Shown here in pieces: positions 3,294-59,224 of a stretch of 61,156 nucleotides of DNA. Each line of letters begins with the position of its first letter. Position 1 is the stretch's first letter. Source of the DNA: Gekko japonicus (lineage: Eukaryota); contig NW_015169920.1 in NCBI RefSeq assembly GCF_001447785.1, positions 1 through 61,156 on the forward strand, in the 5' to 3' direction. A program made the translations under genes and the position numbers. The notes beneath the pieces were generated by a model. The model saw only the letters and a list, made by a program, of their open reading frames with translations. It ran no database searches and was not told the origin of the DNA.

Positions 3294-3734
3294 ATGGCGC
3301 CAATGCCAGTCTGGTCAATGCTACTTCTCCTGATGGTCTTGCTGGGACCCTGGCCAGCCTCCACCCAGAGGGAAACCCGTCACCAGAAGTTCCAGCGGCA
3401 GCACGTCAACTACCCGAAGACCAGCCCTGAGCTGGAGCCCCGGCGCTATTGCAACCTCATGATGCAGAGCAGAAAGATGACCACGAATGCCTGCAAGCCC
3501 TCCAACACCTTCATCCATGGGAGCCCCGAGGATGTGGACGCCATCTGCACCCACGGAGGCACCCACTCCAGTGAGAATTACTACGACAGCAACGTCAGCT
3601 TTGAGGTCACCTCCTGCCGGATCTCTGGGGGCTCCCAGAGGCCCCCCTGCAGCTACAGAGGCAGACTCAGCTCCCAGCACGTCCGAGTGGCCTGTGTCAA
3701 TGGCGTGCCGGTTCACTTCAAAGCTGCCCTTTAG
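3294..3734 (+). CDS. Secreted RNase A superfamily ribonuclease, canonical (146 aa; turtle/iguana pancreatic RNase-like)
   Basis: Signal peptide; F-x-x-Q-H (His12), CKPSNTF (Lys41), PVHF (His119); 6 Cys as in non-mammalian RNases; NVS sequon. Kozak accATGg; acceptor ...cctccctcccctAG at 3283-3284 lies 9 nt before the ATG, the typical single-coding-exon layout. Confidence 0.97.
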   Translation: MAPMPVWSMLLLLMVLLGPWPASTQRETRHQKFQRQHVNYPKTSPELEPRRYCNLMMQSRKMTTNACKPSNTFIHGSPEDVDAICTHGGTHSSENYYDSNVSFEVTSCRISGGSQRPPCSYRGRLSSQHVRVACVNGVPVHFKAAL

Positions 3735-29111: not shown

Positions 29112-29552
29112 ATGACGCTCATTCTGCAAGGGAGCAAAGCCCTGCTGCCGATCCTACTCCTTTGCTTTCTGGCTGTGACCGCCGTCTCCTCCCAGAGTCC
29201 TTTCTACACGCAGTTCCTCTGGCAGCATATCGACTTCCCCCGGAGCAACATAGCGCAGGACTATTGCGGGGTCATGATGCGACAGAGAGGGATGACAAGG
29301 CCTTGCAAAAACACCAACAGCTTTGTCCACATCTCCAAGAAAGATATTAAGGACATGTGCACTTGGGCGGCGACCTACTACCGCCGAAACCTGCGCCTCA
29401 GCAAGAAAGAGGTGCCCGTCACCACGTGCTTTCTGGAGAGGACGGCGCCTAACCGGTGCTTCTACTGGTCCTACACTGGGAAAAGATACATCTACATCAG
29501 CTGTGACAAAAAGGGGTGGCCTGTCCATTTTGAAGAGACCAATTTCATGTAG
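29112..29552 (+). CDS. Secreted RNase A superfamily protein, cationic, catalytic triad intact (146 aa)
   Basis: Signal peptide MTLILQ...AVSS; FLWQH, CKNTNSF, PVHF; 6 Cys in the mature chain. Acceptor gctctttgctgccactgcAG at 29089-29090; true ATG at 29112 (the ORF track starts upstream at a non-ATG codon). Confidence 0.96.
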   Translation: MTLILQGSKALLPILLLCFLAVTAVSSQSPFYTQFLWQHIDFPRSNIAQDYCGVMMRQRGMTRPCKNTNSFVHISKKDIKDMCTWAATYYRRNLRLSKKEVPVTTCFLERTAPNRCFYWSYTGKRYIYISCDKKGWPVHFEETNFM

Positions 29553-40076: not shown

Positions 40077-40264
40077 CCAGGCAGTGATGCTAATTTTTTT
40101 TTTCTTAGGCTCAAATTGGAATTTGGACCATTTGACTGTGATGGTTTGATGCTCTGTCCATTCAGTTCCCCCATCAGCTTTGAATAATGCAGAGATCTAC
40201 GGGAAAGCCAGTAGTCAATATTCGTAGTTTTCGATATGTATGTACATACATGCTGTGAAGTTGC

Positions 40265-41030
40265 TAGTTTGGCATAGTGGTTAAGTGTGCGGACTCTAAT
40301 CTGGGAGAACCGGGTTTGATCCCCCACGCCTCCACTTGCAGCTGCTGGATGACCTTGGGCAAGCCCTAGTTCTGTCAGAGCTGTTCTTGAAAGGGCCCTC
40401 TCAGCCCCACCTACCTCACAGGGTGTCTGTTGTGGGGAGGGGAAGGGAAGGGAAAGGAGTTTGTAAGCCGCTCTGAGACTTCGAGTGAAGGGCGGGGTAT
40501 AAAACCAATATCTTCTCATATGATGCCGTCGAACAGTGAGAACTGGGGGGGGGGCTAGCATTTGCCACCCTCTGCAGAGCCTTCCTTGGTGGTCTCCCCT
40601 CCAAGTACTGACCTTGCTTACCTTCTGAGATCTGACAAGATGAGGCCATATCATACCACTCCACATCCAATTAGGGCCAGTTCCAGGTTTTTTTTGGGGG
40701 GGGGGGCAGAGTGGCCACAGCCTCCTTCCCTCCCCTGGCTACCATCAGGCGTCCCAGATGAGAGTTAGTTTGGTGTAGTGGTTAGGAGCGTGGACTGTAA
40801 TCTGGGAGATTCGATTCCCCGCTTCTCCACATGCAGCTGCTGGTGTGACCTTGGGTCAGTCCCAAGCTCTTTCAGAGCTGTTCCCTCAGGAGCAGTCCTC
40901 GAAAGAGCTCTCTCAGCCCCTACCTACCTCACAGGGCGTCGTGGGGAGGGGAAGGGAAAGGGATTGTAAGCCGCTCTGAGACTTCTTCGGGCAGTGAAGA
41001 GCGGGGTATCCATCCAGTCTCTTCTTCCTT
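40265..41030 (+). mobile_element. Two Squam3-type SINEs (40265-40515, 40762-41030) flanking a 5S-derived SINE fragment (~40558-40665, minus)
   Basis: Family consensus head and tail in both copies. Confidence 0.8.
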
Positions 41031-41106
41031 CCTATCCACGGACTCACATGCCTGTTCACCCTTTCCCCACCCCTTCATAAATCCTCTTAGCTGCAACACT
41101 CACAGA

Positions 41107-41312
41107 CAGTGTTCCCTCTAAGCTGAGTTAGTGTGAGCTAGCTCACAGTTTTTTAGCCTCTGGCTCACTAATTTTTGTCTTTGCTCAGGAAGGATGGCTC
41201 TAGAGCAAACTAATTTATGCTGTAGCCAATTTGCTCGCTCACAACTTTAATGCCAGTAGCTCACAAAGTAGAATTTCTGCTCACAAGACTCCACAGCTTA
41301 GAGGGAGCATTG
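41107..41312. mobile_element. hAT MITE family C (~205 bp, TIR CAGTGTTCCCTCTAAGCT)
   Basis: 8-bp TSD ctcacaga. Other copies ~412-617, 14030-14214, 14803-15008, 35859-36961 (gapped), 43579-43784, 48217-48413, 51814-51927, 51985-52180, 56957-57167. Confidence 0.9.
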
Positions 41313-41613
41313 CTCACAGAGGCCTGCGATGCCCACGTGCCCGTCTCCTGATGATGCTGGGCACTGCATCTGGAGGCAGTGTGCTTGCAAGCAAGCGGGT
41401 CATAGTCAGTGGCACTGCACACTGCCAGGAGAACTGGGCCCGGGCAGCTGCCCGGCCTCTGGGTGCCAGCCCGGAAAACAATAATGAAAATCGAAGTACT
41501 GAAAATGGTACTTAGAGGGTTGCTGGGCCTCTCCGCCACCCTCTTTTGGCTATCAGTTGTTTGCTGGGAGGTGGGACCGAGGTCACCGTCCCTTCCTTGA
41601 ATTTCAGGTGGCC

Positions 41614-42060
41614 ATGTGGACCTGGAAGGGGACGCCCCTTTTCCTAGCCGCCGTGACCTACCTGTGCGTGGGCACCACCGCCTACTACAACGAGAGGTAC
41701 CAGACGTTCTTAAGCCAGCACCACGACAACCCCAAGACGAAAATCGAGAACGCCGAATACTGCGCAGTCCTGATGAATTACAGGAGCGTCTTCCAATCCT
41801 GCAAGCCGTTCAACATTTTCATCCACGCCTCCGAGGTGCAACTCCAGGACGTGTGCGGGGCCGGCGGGTACCCCTACCACGGCACTGGGAAGCGTCAGAG
41901 CAGGACGTACTACCCCATCACCATCTGCAGGCTGGGGGTGATGACCAGGTCCCGGCAGTGCGTCTATTACGCCGCCTTCAGCACCAGGCGCCTGGTCCTT
42001 AGCTGCGATGAGAACAGACTGCCCGTGCAACTAGACGAAGTCCTCACCATGAGTGGATGA
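41614..42060 (+). CDS. Secreted RNase A-fold protein, non-canonical (His119->Gln, Thr45->Ile), 148 aa
   Basis: Signal peptide; FLSQH, CKPFNIF, PVQL; 6 conserved Cys; no stops or frameshifts. Acceptor ccttccttgaatttcAG at 41606-41607; gccATG; AATAAA at 42136-42141. Confidence 0.95.
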   Translation: MWTWKGTPLFLAAVTYLCVGTTAYYNERYQTFLSQHHDNPKTKIENAEYCAVLMNYRSVFQSCKPFNIFIHASEVQLQDVCGAGGYPYHGTGKRQSRTYYPITICRLGVMTRSRQCVYYAAFSTRRLVLSCDENRLPVQLDEVLTMSG

Positions 42061-43493
42061 ACACTGGGCGGCCTCTCGGAGTGAATGCTCGGAGGACACT
42101 GGCTGGCCTCGGCACGGATGCAACCCTTCCCCTGAAATAAAGGTGTCTTTGGGCAGACAGGCTACTCAGAAGAGCGTTTCTCTGTTGCATCGTATGAAGG
42201 TTGAGGGCAATGCTCCCTGTGTTCCCAGTGTGCCGGTGTGGCTTCAATCTGGACCCTTCCCCCAATATCTCCGGGCAAAACCATTCAAGTCCTGCGTTGC
42301 CAACCTCCAGGCGGGGCCTCGAGATCTCCCAGAATTACAGCTCCTCTCCAGACAACAGAGCTCAGTTCCCCTGGAGAAAATGGCTGTTTTGGAGGATGGA
42401 CTCTACGACACTTGACCTCACTGAGGCTCCTCCCCTCTCCAAACCCCACCTTCTCAAGGCTCCGCCTCCGAAAGCTTCAGGAATGAACCGACCCAGAGTT
42501 GGCGACTGTATTCTTAACTTGCTGTTCCTCAAGGTCGGAAGGGCTTCCAAAATCCTCATCTGCGTTTCTCTCTGAAGTCTGGCATTCAAAATCATCTGGG
42601 CTTGCTTTCGAACTCGAGCGGATGCATTCTAAATTCACCACTTTCAATTTTTAAAAAAACTTACATACCGAGTTGTGGCCCACACGCAGGGCTTGCCACA
42701 CCTTGCGGCTTATCTTGTATCTTTGTATCTCCCTACACCTCCTCCAAGAAGGTGTACATGGCTAGCCCTTCCTCACTTTATCCTCACCACAACCCTGTGA
42801 GGTAGGTGAGGCTGATAGTGACCAGTCCAACGTCAACCATTGAGCTTCACGGCAAAGTAGGGATTTGAACCTGGGTCTTTCCAAATTCTAGTCTGACACT
42901 CTGACCAGTACACCGCACCGGCGCTCTGTTTCTTCCTCCCTTTCTCCTTCTCTACATTACCCATGTGCCTCTTGGTAATCGACTGTAAAACAAAAGATCA
43001 TTGTGTAACTGACTGAACCAAGAATGTTTGGGTGTGATGTATTTACTGTGTGCAGGACAGTGTTTGTGCAGGAATAAAGTTCTTCACATAAAGGCTCTCA
43101 CAGCAGTCATATGTAGAGTCACTCCTCTTCTTCCCAGGATACTCTCAATTTTGCCTCTAGACACTGATATCAACTGAGGGGAGGGATCCAAACCAACCTG
43201 AGGCAATGAAAACTGCATAATCCACACTAGACATTCTGCCTTGGGAGCCGTAGATCATTTCAGGGGGTGGCTGCGTCGATGTGCAATAAAAATAGCTAGA
43301 TTCAGATCTAGTAGCACCGTAGAGACCAACATGATTTTGGGGAATATGAACTTTCGAGCTATACAGTTATAACAAATCTGTTTGGATACATTTCACACAC
43401 ATACAGTATGTAGCTGCAGGATTTCAAGTTCTGTCTCTTCTATGGTTACAGGAACATTTTTTTTTAGTCACCCTCCAAAGTAGATATATGCAG

Positions 43494-48679: not shown

Positions 48680-50045
48680 ATAGGAATATAAGAAGAGCCC
48701 TGTTGGATCAGACCAATGAGCCATCTAGGCCGGCATGCTGTCTCACACAGTGGCCAACCAGTTCCTCTGGAGGGCCAGTAACAGGGCATAGAGGCCGAGG
48801 CCTTCCACTGATGTTGCCTCCTGATTCTGGGATTCAGAGGTTCCCCTCAGTCACCATGGCTAGTAGCCATTGATAGACTTATTCTCCATGACTGTATCGA
48901 ATCCCCTTTTAAAGCTGTTTATTCCTGTGGCATCAGTACATCCTCTGGCAGCAAATTCCACATTTTAATCACTCTCTGTGTAAAGTAGTATTTCCTTTTG
49001 TCCATCGTTAACCTCCTGCCCATCAGCTTCATTGGACTCCTCAAATTCTAGTATTTTGGGAGAGGGCAAAAAATTTCTTTGTCAACTTTCTCCACCCCAT
49101 ATATAATTTTATAAGCCTCTCTATCATGTCCTTCCTTAATCGTCTCTTTTCTGAGTTGAAAAGTCTCAGACTCTTCAGCCTTTCCTCATAAGGAAGGTAC
49201 TCCAACCAGTTATCTGTGTTGCCCTCTTCTGTACTTTTTCCAGCTCTGCAGTGTCCTTTAGGAGATACGGTGACCAGAACTGTACACAGTATTCAAAATG
49301 AGGCTGCACCATAGATTTATACGGGGCATTACAATATTGTCTGTTTTATTTTCGGTCCCTTTCCTAATAATGCCTAGCATCAAGTTTGCCTTTTTCATCG
49401 CTGCAGCACACTGGGTTGACACTTCCATTGAGCTATCCACTATGATTCCAAAAGCTTTTTCCTTCTCTGTCTCAGCGAGTTCAGACCCCAGTAGCCTATA
49501 CTTGGAGTTGGGATTTTTTGTCCCAATATGTATCACCTTATACTTACCAACATTGAACTTCATGTGCCACATAGTCACCCACTCACCCAGTTTGTGGAGG
49601 TCCTCTTGGAGCTCTTCACAGTCAGCCTTGGTTTTTACCATCCTGCAAACGTGGCTCACCCATAGTTACTTCCAGATGGTTTATAAATAAATTAGATGGT
49701 GCCTACCCCAATACCGATCCTGGTGGGACCTAGCTGCTTCTTTCCATTGCGAGAACTGTCCATTTATTCCTACTCTTTGTTTCCTGTGATTTAACTGGTT
49801 TTTAATCCGTAAGAGAATCTGCCCTCTTATCCCACAACTGTTAAATATACTCAGGAGTCTTTGGTGAAGTGCCTTGTCAAAAGCCTTTTGAAAGTCCAGG
49901 TATATACTGTCTACCGGGTCACCGTTGTCTACATGCTTGTTCACTTTCTCAAAGAACTCCAAAAGGTTGGCGAGGCCAGACTTCCCTTTGCAGAAGCCAT
50001 GCTGATTTCCCCTCGGCAGGCTTTGTTCCCCTATGTGCCTAACAA
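48680..50045 (-). mobile_element. CR1 LINE 3' portion (degraded RT)
   Basis: VDSIYLDFQKAFDK...WHMKFNVGKYKVIHIG; CR1-type 3'UTR. Confidence 0.92.
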
Positions 50046-50708
50046 TTCTATCTATACCAACCCACCCCAGTGAACAGTTGTGTCTTCATTCTTTCTCATG
50101 CTGTGTTAGCCAATAATGGGAAAAGCTACCACTTTTTTTCGGTACAGATGCCTTTAATTTCAACAGACACAGCTGTTCCTGGCACAGACATTGAGGAATG
50201 GAAAATCTGCTCCTGTTGACCTTTAGCCTGTTGCATTTTGCCAGGAAAACTCTCAGAATTTATTGTGGCCCTGGCTGCTACCCAATCATCCTCCATCTTA
50301 CATTAGTCCTCTAAGTTTAACATGCTTTCCCCACCTTTTTAAAAACGTTGTTTTTCAGGTTTGAAGGTAGTAAATACATGGTGAACAAGGGTGCCTTTGA
50401 CTGTGCAGACCACTTTTCTCCCACCCTCAGATAAATTATAACTGACTGATGCACATCTAGGATTAGAGAGAAGGGTTTCTGAATGCTCAGTATGCATTTT
50501 ACACTCCAGAACAGCCAAGTTGCTATTCCCAGCATTATATTTTGACTTAATATGCCTAAAAGGGAGGGGCTGTGCTTCAGTGGTAGAGCATCTGCTTGGT
50601 ATGCAGAAGGTCCCAGGTTTGAATCCCGGCATCTCCAGAGAAAAGATTTGGCTGTAGGTGATGTGAAAGACTTGTGCCTGAGTCCTTGGAGAGCTGCTGC
50701 CAGTCTGA

Positions 50709-59024: not shown

Positions 59025-59061
59025 TCCTTGACTAGCTGTGTCTTTTTTTCCTCCTCCCTAG

Positions 59062-59143
59062 TTACACCGAACAGCTCAGCTTTTTGTATATGGCAGCCCG
59101 GATGGATGGGATGTATGCAGCTGTGTCCCGAGCTTTCCACGAG
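59062..59143 (+). CDS. METTL17: METTL17 coding exon 5
   Basis: [27 protein letters not shown] (human [27 protein letters not shown]); GAG|GTGAGT donor. Confidence 0.97.
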
Positions 59144-59224
59144 GTGAGTTGCTGCTTCAGCTTTTGGAGGCGTCGGTGGATTAGGAACCCTTTTTTAAGC
59201 AGCCCTAATTCAAAGGGTAGTAGG

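What the first reader, a model, noticed from the sequence alone, without database searches (positions are those of the whole stretch)
41614..42060. Intact but probably catalytically dead lizard RNase A paralogue (His119Gln plus Thr45Ile)
Seen: the ORF, signal peptide, six Cys, splice acceptor, poly(A) signal and high-GC3 codon use are all intact. The catalytic PVH motif reads PVQ (CAA at 42028-42030) and the pyrimidine-binding Thr of CKxxNTF is Ile (41815-41817). The mature chain is Tyr-rich (11 Tyr by my count). Known: His119 is the general acid, and inactive 'non-canonical' RNases (RNase 9-13) are described mainly from the mammalian male reproductive tract. Inference: two active-site losses in an otherwise intact gene suggest a squamate pseudo-enzyme kept for a binding, immune or reproductive role, possibly convergent with RNase 9-13.
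Basis: partly seen in the sequence, partly recalled or inferred. Interest (0 to 1): 0.8.

Follow-up and report, generated by a model that had tools for sequence, protein, structure and literature searches.

The report
Gecko RNase lacking its catalytic histidine
This gecko gene encodes a secreted ribonuclease-shaped protein that has kept its fold across gecko families but has let key cutting residues drift, an independent reptile parallel to the enzyme-dead RNases 9-13 of mammals.

Summary
Bases 41614-42060 (+) are an intact 148-codon RNase A superfamily gene (Pfam PF00074, E 1.8e-21). It has six mature Cys and reads PVQ for PVH (CAA 42028-42030) and CKPFNIF for CKxxNTF (ATT 41815-41817). A genome contig from a second individual shows the same two codons and only one difference in the coding part, a synonymous one.

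Orthologues exist in Gekko kuhli, Paroedura picta and Euleptes europaea, plus three unnamed assemblies. Together they form one clade (100/99 support). Thr45 is lost in all seven members. Position 119 reads Q, L or H, with Gln probably ancestral and the G. kuhli His a likely reversal.

Of 20 columns conserved across the family, the clade keeps 16. The four that drift are the Lys41, Asn44, Thr45 and His119 equivalents. So the fold is under constraint and catalysis largely is not.

Best reading: a retained, mostly non-catalytic secreted RNase-fold protein, gecko-wide rather than squamate-wide, and independent of mammalian RNases 9-13.

This scan had already noted other triad-less RNase A paralogues on another piece of this genome.

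The parts
41590..41607 (+). Candidate 3' splice acceptor (pyrimidine tract, then AG at 41606-41607), 6 nt before the start codon.
   Evidence: Read directly (ccttccttgaatttcag|GTGGCC ATG). The unnamed orthologue P0008 reads through an equivalent ...CAG|GTGGAGATG. No RNA read verifies it.
41614..42060 (+). Complete single-exon coding sequence, 148 codons plus TGA, of an RNase A superfamily protein.
   Evidence: Pfam PF00074, E 1.8e-21. AlphaFold2 model pLDDT 88.4. Best PDB folds are turtle RNase 2zpo (TM 0.90) and angiogenins.
41614..41682 (+). Predicted signal peptide (MWTWKGTPLFLAAVTYLCVGTTA), with cleavage after Ala23.
   Evidence: Hydrophobic core and a small residue at -1 and -3, read. Conserved in the orthologues. 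Low pLDDT in the model. No signal-peptide predictor was available.
41719..41721 (+). His36, the equivalent of catalytic His12. Retained.
   Evidence: The alignment to RNase A and angiogenin puts QHHD on QHMD/QHHD. Invariant in 7 of 7 clade members.
41803..41805 (+). Lys64, the equivalent of catalytic Lys41. Retained here.
   Evidence: In the clade the column reads K,K,V,K,K,K,R, with Val in Euleptes and Arg in P0008.
41815..41817 (+). Ile68 (ATT) in place of the pyrimidine-binding Thr45 of the CKxxNTF signature.
   Evidence: The clade reads I,V,I,I,I,I,S against Thr 85% in 115 other RNases. Unchanged in the second individual.
42028..42030 (+). Gln139 (CAA) in place of the general-acid His119.
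   Evidence: The clade reads Q,H,L,L,Q,Q,Q against His 85% in the family. Unchanged in the second individual.
41866..41895 (+). Loop GYPYHGTGKR (residues 85-94) carrying clade-specific conserved His89 and Lys93.
   Evidence: His is at 3% and Lys at 8% in other RNases at these columns, but both are 6 of 7 in the clade. It aligns with NGSPYRE-NL of mouse angiogenin.
42031..42048 (+). C-terminal strand LDEVLT, nearly invariant in the clade.
   Evidence: Leu140, Asp141, Glu142, Leu144, Thr145 conserved. The model has a strand at 137-144.
42136..42141 (+). AATAAA poly(A) signal, 76 nt after the stop codon.
   Evidence: Not verified by RNA.

Best explanation
The gene encodes a secreted, three-disulfide RNase A-fold protein of the angiogenin-like sauropsid type. 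It arose by duplication inside the RNase cluster next to METTL17.

Its lineage lost the general-acid histidine (His119 to Gln) and the pyrimidine-binding threonine (Thr45 to Ile, Val or Ser) before the gecko families Gekkonidae and Sphaerodactylidae split.

Since then selection has kept the reading frame, the signal peptide, all six cysteines and the hydrophobic core. It has also fixed about 15 new clade-specific residues. Over the same time the catalytic columns (Lys41, Asn44, Thr45, His119) were free to change.

The protein therefore most likely works by binding rather than by cleaving RNA. It may still hold an anion or nucleotide through the retained Gln11, His12, Lys41 and Asp121 half-site. 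It may also use the conserved PYHGTGK loop and the LDEVLT strand as a surface.

Shown here: fold, orthology, pattern of constraint, and the reality of the two codons. Inferred: secretion, loss of activity, and binding as the mode of action.
For: - Family and fold: Pfam E 1.8e-21; AF2 pLDDT 88.4; TM 0.90 to turtle RNase 2zpo.
- Orthologues: G. kuhli 89%, E. europaea 70%, P. picta 64% identity, plus unnamed P0005, P0006 and P0008. With the catalytic columns left out of the tree they form one clade at 100/99.
- Constraint: of 20 family-conserved columns the clade keeps 16. These include all six Cys and the Phe8, His12, Phe46, Tyr97, Pro117 and Val118 equivalents. The four that vary are all active-site columns (hypergeometric p 0.001).
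- New constraint: about 15 residues are conserved in the clade but rare in the family, among them His89, Lys93, Tyr100, Tyr119, Leu127 and Thr145.
- Open frame: the branches below the clade's stem sum to 1.53 changes per site, about 227 replacements. Under neutrality about 12.6 stop codons would be expected; none is seen in the seven sequences.
- Second individual: 1 synonymous difference in 447 coding bases against 10 in 498 flanking bases (Fisher p 0.0125).
- GC3 is 0.86 against a window GC of 0.49.
- Parsimony makes Gln119 ancestral in the clade: two changes inside it, against five or more if His were ancestral.
- Literature: an H12K/H119Q double mutant of RNase A serves as an enzymatically inactive control (PMC5730577). 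From my own knowledge, single His119 replacements lower RNA cleavage by about four orders of magnitude.
Against: - No activity measurement exists.
- His12 is invariant, Lys41 is kept in 5 of 7 members (Arg in a sixth) and Asp121 in 6 of 7. That could mean residual chemistry matters.
- G. kuhli carries His at position 119.
- Two RNA-seq runs of the same species label gave no reads on the gene. No control stretch was laid, so this is no test.
- Retention is not universal. The Sphaerodactylus townsendi member is extremely diverged (end branch 2.48) and lacks a disulfide pair. No orthologue surfaced from the Heteronotia or Eublepharis proteomes.
- The stop-codon argument is weakened because protein databases list only open frames. 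For the window's own lineage alone P(no stop) is 0.06.
- The polymorphism test falls to p 0.19 if a cluster of six upstream differences near the contig end is left out.
- No codon-level dN/dS could be computed.
Confidence: 0.6

Rival explanations
1. It is still an enzyme: a low-activity or altered-specificity RNase. His12 and Lys41 would carry out slow transphosphorylation, as in angiogenin, whose very low activity is nevertheless essential. The Thr45 replacement would change base preference.
For: In the clade His12 is kept in 7 of 7 members, Gln11 in 6 of 7, Lys41 in 5 of 7 plus one Arg, and Asp121 in 6 of 7 plus one Glu. G. kuhli has His at 119. From my own knowledge, angiogenin works at 1e-5 to 1e-6 of RNase A activity, and Thr45 variants of RNase A gain purine cleavage.
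Against: - Position 119 reads Gln, Leu or His within one clade. Leu cannot donate a proton, so that column is not constrained for catalysis.
- Euleptes also has Val for Lys41. Paroedura and P0006 have His for Asn44.
- Thr or Ser at position 45 is never restored in the gecko members.
- Net charge fell to between 0 and +4, against a family median of +7, which does not favour RNA binding.
Confidence: 0.22
2. It is a gene under relaxed selection on its way to loss in this species: open by luck, no longer expressed or useful.
For: Zero reads in two RNA-seq runs (without a control). The S. townsendi member looks decayed. No orthologue was seen in the Heteronotia or Eublepharis proteomes. Divergence from its congener is fairly fast (89% amino-acid identity).
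Against: The frame is intact with the start, signal peptide, acceptor and poly(A) signal in place. All structural columns are conserved. The only coding difference between two individuals is synonymous. GC3 has not decayed towards the background. Active-site loss is ancestral to a clade that stayed open in at least four named species of two families.
Confidence: 0.1
3. The Gln and Ile codons are assembly or sequencing errors in an ordinary active RNase.
For: None beyond the prior chance of a base error. The congener G. kuhli reads His.
Against: An independent contig at word depth about 70, from another individual (11 differences overall), has the same CAA and ATT. P0005, P0006 and P0008 also read Gln, and all gecko orthologues read Ile or Val.
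Confidence: 0.01

Closest known systems
Mammalian non-canonical RNases 9-13 (RNase A superfamily)
   Same: These are secreted RNase A-fold paralogues from the same chromosomal cluster. They are defined by a missing catalytic triad residue and/or a broken CKxxNTF signature (PMC3845642). Recombinant RNases 9-12 show no RNase activity (PMC11647505). The gecko protein meets that definition: His119 is lost and the motif reads CKPFNIF.
   Different: - The origin is independent. The gecko clade's nearest relatives are canonical turtle and lizard RNases. The literature places the origin of the 13 mammalian lineages within mammals (PMC3845642).
- The gecko proteins keep His12 and mostly Lys41, and keep all three ancestral disulfides.
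- Tissue and function are unknown. No link to the male reproductive tract was tested.
Angiogenin and the angiogenin-like RNases of sauropsids (for example green turtle egg-white RNase, PDB 2zpo)
   Same: These give the best sequence and fold matches: 2bwk at E 9e-20 and 2zpo at TM 0.90, rmsd 1.9. They share six Cys in three disulfides, a QHHD start of helix 1, similar length and a single coding exon.
   Different: Those proteins keep His, Lys and His plus Thr45, and are active enzymes. The gecko clade lacks His119 and Thr45, is less basic, and has its own conserved loop and C-terminal strand.
A second triad-less RNase lineage of sauropsids (PVR-type: Euleptes XP_056720170, Heteronotia XP_060110932 and XP_060110934, several turtles).
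   Same: It has the same cluster type and the same kind of loss (His119 replaced), and it is also present in geckos.
   Different: It sits in a separate part of the tree. His119 is Arg or Tyr and Lys41 is often lost too. It also occurs in turtles, so it is older and wider than the clade described here.

Membership tests
RNase A superfamily (Pfam PF00074) | Significant match to the family profile | tested here: met
   E 1.8e-21, 77.2 bits against a curated cut-off of 23.1, covering profile positions 2-121 of 121.
RNase A superfamily (Pfam PF00074) | RNase A fold | tested here: met
   AF2 model pLDDT 88.4. Foldseek gives 2zpo at TM 0.90 and rmsd 1.9 A, and angiogenins at TM 0.85-0.9.
RNase A superfamily (Pfam PF00074) | [quoted passage not shown] | tested here: met
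   Six mature Cys align with Cys26, 40, 58, 84, 95 and 110 of RNase A. All are invariant in the clade. The bonds themselves are inferred.
RNase A superfamily (Pfam PF00074) | N-terminal signal peptide and an uninterrupted coding exon | tested here: met
   The ORF has no interruption. The hydrophobic N-terminus was read by eye and is conserved in orthologues. No predictor was run.
RNase A superfamily (Pfam PF00074) | Location in the RNase gene cluster beside METTL17 | tested here: met
   Two more RNase A genes lie at 3294-3734 and 29112-29552. A METTL17 exon at 59060-59152 (+) matches human METTL17 residues 149-179, E 2.8e-7.
Canonical (catalytically competent) RNases, including angiogenin | Catalytic triad His12-Lys41-His119 | tested here: not met
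   His12 and Lys41 are present. His119 is Gln, codon CAA at 42028-42030, and this is confirmed in a second individual.
Canonical (catalytically competent) RNases, including angiogenin | Signature motif CKxxNTF | tested here: not met
   The motif reads CKPFNIF. Thr or Ser holds this column in 141 of 158 aligned domains.
Canonical (catalytically competent) RNases, including angiogenin | Ribonucleolytic activity | not testable with these tools
   Needs a recombinant protein assay.
Non-canonical RNases (defined as triad and/or signature missing) | Triad residue and/or signature motif missing in an otherwise intact, conserved gene | tested here: met
   Definition taken from PMC3845642.
Mammalian RNase 9-13 lineages (orthology) | Descent from one of the mammalian RNase 9-13 gene lineages | tested here: inconclusive
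   The clade's nearest relatives are sauropsid canonical RNases (89/90 for the wider group, 100/99 for the clade), which argues for an independent origin. No identified RNase 9-13 sequence was in the tree.
Mammalian RNase 9-13 lineages (orthology) | Expression in the male reproductive tract | not testable with these tools
   The RNA runs are coded and gave no reads. Tissue is unknown.

The most novel reading that the evidence does not exclude
Geckos carry an old family of secreted RNase-fold ligands in which the catalytic machinery was released from selection while a new conserved surface arose (PYHGTGK loop, Tyr-rich sheet, LDEVLT strand). In Gekko kuhli the lost general-acid His has returned by a single base change. 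That would give a natural series Gln/Leu/His at position 119 on one scaffold: a natural test of whether a pseudo-enzyme can be re-activated after tens of millions of years. Together with the second, PVR-type lineage, it would mean sauropsids evolved non-catalytic RNases repeatedly and independently of mammals.
Probability: 0.2. Interest if true: 0.65.

Novelty: new member of a known kind. Interest (0 to 1): 0.45.

Why it matters
Non-catalytic RNase A paralogues are known as a mammalian speciality (RNases 9-13). Reptiles are described in the literature I could search as having only 3-5 RNase genes (PMC3845642).

Here a reptile lineage shows the same outcome by an independent route. The pattern is unusually clean: every structural column is kept and only the catalytic columns drift.

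It offers comparative material for asking what RNase folds do when they stop cutting RNA. It also offers natural Gln, Leu and His variants at the general-acid position for enzymology.

It is not a new kind of system, and its biological role is still unknown.

Tried and rejected
No orthologue DNA could be fetched, so no codon alignment or dN/dS was made. I also could not name the species or the neighbouring genes of the unnamed (Logan) proteins P0005, P0006 and P0008.
- The first AF2 run, on a 7-row alignment, failed (pLDDT 37.5). It was replaced by a 96-row alignment.
- Read laying: RNA runs X19 and X20 gave 0 reads, and the relative's run X15 gave nothing. With only one call allowed no control gene could be laid, so expression is untested and no relative's DNA was obtained.
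- A word search with P0008 found no named relative closer than a newt RNase at 39% identity.
- A Pfam scan of six downstream ORFs did not detect METTL17. A PDB sequence search of one ORF did.
- Literature searches for gecko or squamate RNase A pseudo-enzymes found nothing specific. The library lacks most subscription journals, so this is weak evidence of novelty.
- Rejected: an assembly error and a single-species dying copy.
- Rejected: a membrane-active cationic antimicrobial role as the main function. The net charge of 0 to +4 is low for the family.
The coding part is one exon, and the 5' non-coding exon was not located.
- Runs of N in the window were left untouched.

Full report
**What is there.** Bases 41614-42060 on the + strand are an uninterrupted ORF of 148 codons ending in TGA. 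It matches Pfam RnaseA (PF00074) over the whole profile at E 1.8e-21. Its best solved relatives are angiogenins and turtle RNase.

The HMMER alignments to mouse angiogenin and bovine RNase A fix the equivalences:
- QHH corresponds to Gln11-His12.
- CKPFNIF corresponds to Cys40-Lys41-Pro-Val-Asn44-Thr45-Phe46.
- PVQLD corresponds to Pro117-Val118-His119-Phe120-Asp121.

With cleavage after Ala23 the mature chain has 125 residues, six Cys, 11 Tyr and pI 8.8. GC3 is 0.86 against a window GC of 0.49. A pyrimidine tract and AG end at 41607, six bases before the ATG. AATAAA lies at 42136.

The gene sits in a unique stretch between SINE-like repeats at 41107-41315 and 42298-42506.

A 979-nt contig from a deep genome run of the same species label covers 41353-42297. 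It differs from the window at 11 places, so it comes from another individual or haplotype.

Only one difference is in the coding part: 41739 G>A, Thr42 ACG>ACA, which is synonymous. The Gln and Ile codons are unchanged. That gives 1 difference in 447 coding bases against 10 in 498 flanking bases (Fisher p 0.0125). The value rises to p 0.19 if a cluster of six upstream differences near the contig end is left out.

Two RNA-seq runs of the same species label gave no reads. No control stretch could be laid, so this says nothing firm about expression.

**Context.** The window holds three RNase A genes on the + strand: 3294-3734, 29112-29552 and this one. The other two keep PVH and N(T/S)F.

An exon at about 59060-59152 (+) matches residues 149-179 of human METTL17 at E 2.8e-7. 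I did not test that. The closest protein here is from Gekko kuhli.

**Relatives.** Word searches found orthologues in these species:
- Gekko kuhli: KAL8176497, 89% identity.
- Euleptes europaea: XP_056720172, 70%.
- Paroedura picta: XP_077171042, 64%, listed under four XP accessions.
- Two unnamed Logan assemblies: P0005 (65%) and P0006 (59%).

A profile search of 1.84 billion representatives showed a steep drop in score. The gecko group scored 279 bits and an unnamed P0008 scored 157 bits. The next hit, a canonical turtle RNase, scored 99 bits.

In a careful maximum-likelihood tree of 44 domains, built with the five active-site columns left out, the window protein, P0002-P0006 and P0008 form one clade at 100/99. 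Its nearest neighbours are turtle RNases (P0007, P0009). Next comes the group holding the neighbouring paralogue at 29112 and an agamid RNase.

The named members belong to two gecko families, Gekkonidae and Sphaerodactylidae. No named non-gecko orthologue was found.

**State of the active site across the clade**:
- His12 is kept in all seven members.
- Lys41 reads K,K,V,K,K,K,R.
- Asn44 reads N,N,N,H,N,H,N.
- Thr45 reads I,V,I,I,I,I,S.
- His119 reads Q,H,L,L,Q,Q,Q.

Gln at 119 in the outgroup member P0008 and in three gecko members makes Gln the parsimonious ancestral state. That needs two changes within the clade: to Leu, and back to His in G. kuhli. If His were ancestral, five or more changes would be needed. 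The G. kuhli record is flagged UNVERIFIED_CONTAM by NCBI, and I could not check its reads.

**Pattern of constraint.** I compared the seven clade members with 115 other RNase A domains, column by column.

Twenty columns are conserved at 75% or more in the family. The clade keeps sixteen of them: all six Cys and the Phe8, His12, Arg33, Phe46, Ile47, Ser75, Phe79 (as Tyr), Tyr97, Pro117 and Val118 equivalents. The four that vary are exactly Lys41, Asn44, Thr45 and His119. Five of the twenty columns are active-site columns, so this distribution has hypergeometric p 0.001.

The clade also has about fifteen conserved residues that are rare elsewhere: Glu27, Leu53, Pro65, Ser73, Glu74, Leu77, His89, Lys93, Tyr100, Pro101, Tyr119, Leu127, Ser130, Leu140 and Thr145. 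His89 and Lys93 lie in the loop that aligns with NGSPYRE-NL of mouse angiogenin. From my own knowledge, that is the region proposed as angiogenin's cell-binding loop.

The gecko members are less basic (net charge 0 to +4) than the family median of +7. They are also richer in Tyr, at 5.8-8.3% against a median of 4.2%.

The branches below the clade's stem sum to 1.53 changes per site, about 227 replacements. At the nonsense-to-missense ratio of this gene's own codons (0.055), about 12.6 stops would be expected under neutrality. None is seen. This figure is inflated in meaning, because protein databases list only open frames. For the window's own lineage alone P(no stop) is 0.06.

**Fold.** A first AlphaFold2 run on seven sequences failed (pLDDT 37.5). 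With a 96-row alignment the model reached pLDDT 88.4, and above 93 over most of the mature domain. It matches green-turtle egg-white RNase 2zpo (TM 0.90, rmsd 1.9 A) and many angiogenin structures.

**How it most likely works.** The evidence fits a secreted RNase-fold protein whose fold and a new surface are under selection while catalysis is not. Gln or Leu cannot replace the general acid. An H12K/H119Q RNase A double mutant is used as an inactive control (PMC5730577). From my own knowledge, single His119 replacements cost about four orders of magnitude on RNA substrates.

The invariant His12 and the mostly retained Lys41, Gln11 and Asp121 suggest that the phosphate-binding half of the site may still bind an anion or nucleotide. 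I therefore put 0.6 on 'retained, essentially non-catalytic binding protein'. I put 0.22 on 'weak or altered catalysis that still matters', 0.1 on 'drifting towards loss in this species' and 0.01 on sequence error. The ligand, the tissue and the biological role are unknown.

**Limits of retention.** The Sphaerodactylus townsendi protein XP_048374065 falls inside the clade at 100/100. However, it has an end branch of 2.48 changes per site, lacks the Cys40-Cys95 pair and has an unrelated long C-terminus. No orthologue surfaced from the Heteronotia or Eublepharis proteomes. So the gene is not kept everywhere in geckos.

**Comparison with what is known.** Goo and Cho define non-canonical RNases as those missing the triad and/or the CKxxNTF motif. 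They also state that reptiles have only 3-5 RNase genes (PMC3845642). Recombinant RNases 9-12 lack RNase activity (PMC11647505).

The gecko protein meets the definition but is not an orthologue of those genes, because its relatives are sauropsid canonical RNases. RNase 9-13 sequences were not in my tree, so the independence rests on that placement plus the literature.

Other His119-less RNases turned up in passing:
- A PVR-type lineage in turtles and geckos: Euleptes XP_056720170 and Heteronotia XP_060110932, XP_060110934 and XP_060110535.
- Turkey and pheasant entries with Thr41 and Tyr119.
- Single Gln119 cases in tuatara and in the turtle Emydura.

I found no paper describing any of these, but the searchable library is incomplete.

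It is a new member of a known kind. Interest is moderate.

Noticed in passing
window 3294-3734 (+) and 29112-29552 (+): Two further intact RNase A genes with canonical His12, Lys41 and His119 and N(T/S)F. The one at 29112 is strongly basic (pI 9.5, net charge +10) and belongs to the group nearest the Gln119 clade. The one at 3294 groups elsewhere, with P0077.
   Followed up: partly
window 59060-59152 (+): An exon matching human METTL17 residues 149-179 (E 2.8e-7). This confirms that the RNase cluster abuts METTL17. The other METTL17 exons were not mapped.
   Followed up: partly
window 40263-40517, 40759-41032, 41107-41315, 42298-42506: SINE-like interspersed repeats with many copies across the window (75-94% identity) bracket the gene. 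The genome contig of the second individual breaks at them.
   Followed up: no
window 49261-50085 (-): ORFs with a weak reverse-transcriptase match (PF00078, E 0.014): probably a LINE fragment between the RNase gene and METTL17.
   Followed up: no
P0002 (Gekko kuhli KAL8176497): The closest orthologue reads PVH where the window reads PVQ: an apparent Gln-to-His reversal at the general-acid position. The record is flagged UNVERIFIED_CONTAM, and its model adds 60 upstream residues through a roughly 100-nt predicted intron that would end at 41607 in the window.
   Followed up: partly
P0108 (Sphaerodactylus townsendi XP_048374065): A member of the same clade (100/100) on a branch about ten times longer than the others. 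It lacks the Cys40-Cys95 pair and has a long unrelated C-terminus. It could be a decayed copy, a wrong gene model or a radical change.
   Followed up: partly
P0045, P0062, P0103, P0129, P0018, P0022, P0039, P0051, P0098: A separate set of RNase A proteins with Arg or Tyr at His119 and often no Lys41. They come from geckos (Euleptes, Heteronotia), several turtles, and turkey and pheasant. Triad-less RNases look common in sauropsids.
   Followed up: partly
P0017 (Sphenodon punctatus) and P0007 (Emydura macquarii): Otherwise canonical RNases (Lys41 and Thr/Ser45 kept) that read Gln at the His119 position. Other turtles of the same group read His.
   Followed up: no
window 41402-41442: Six of the eleven differences between the window and the second individual's contig cluster in 41 bases upstream of the gene. 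Other short contigs also pile up there, so this may be a repeat edge or a divergent haplotype.
   Followed up: no
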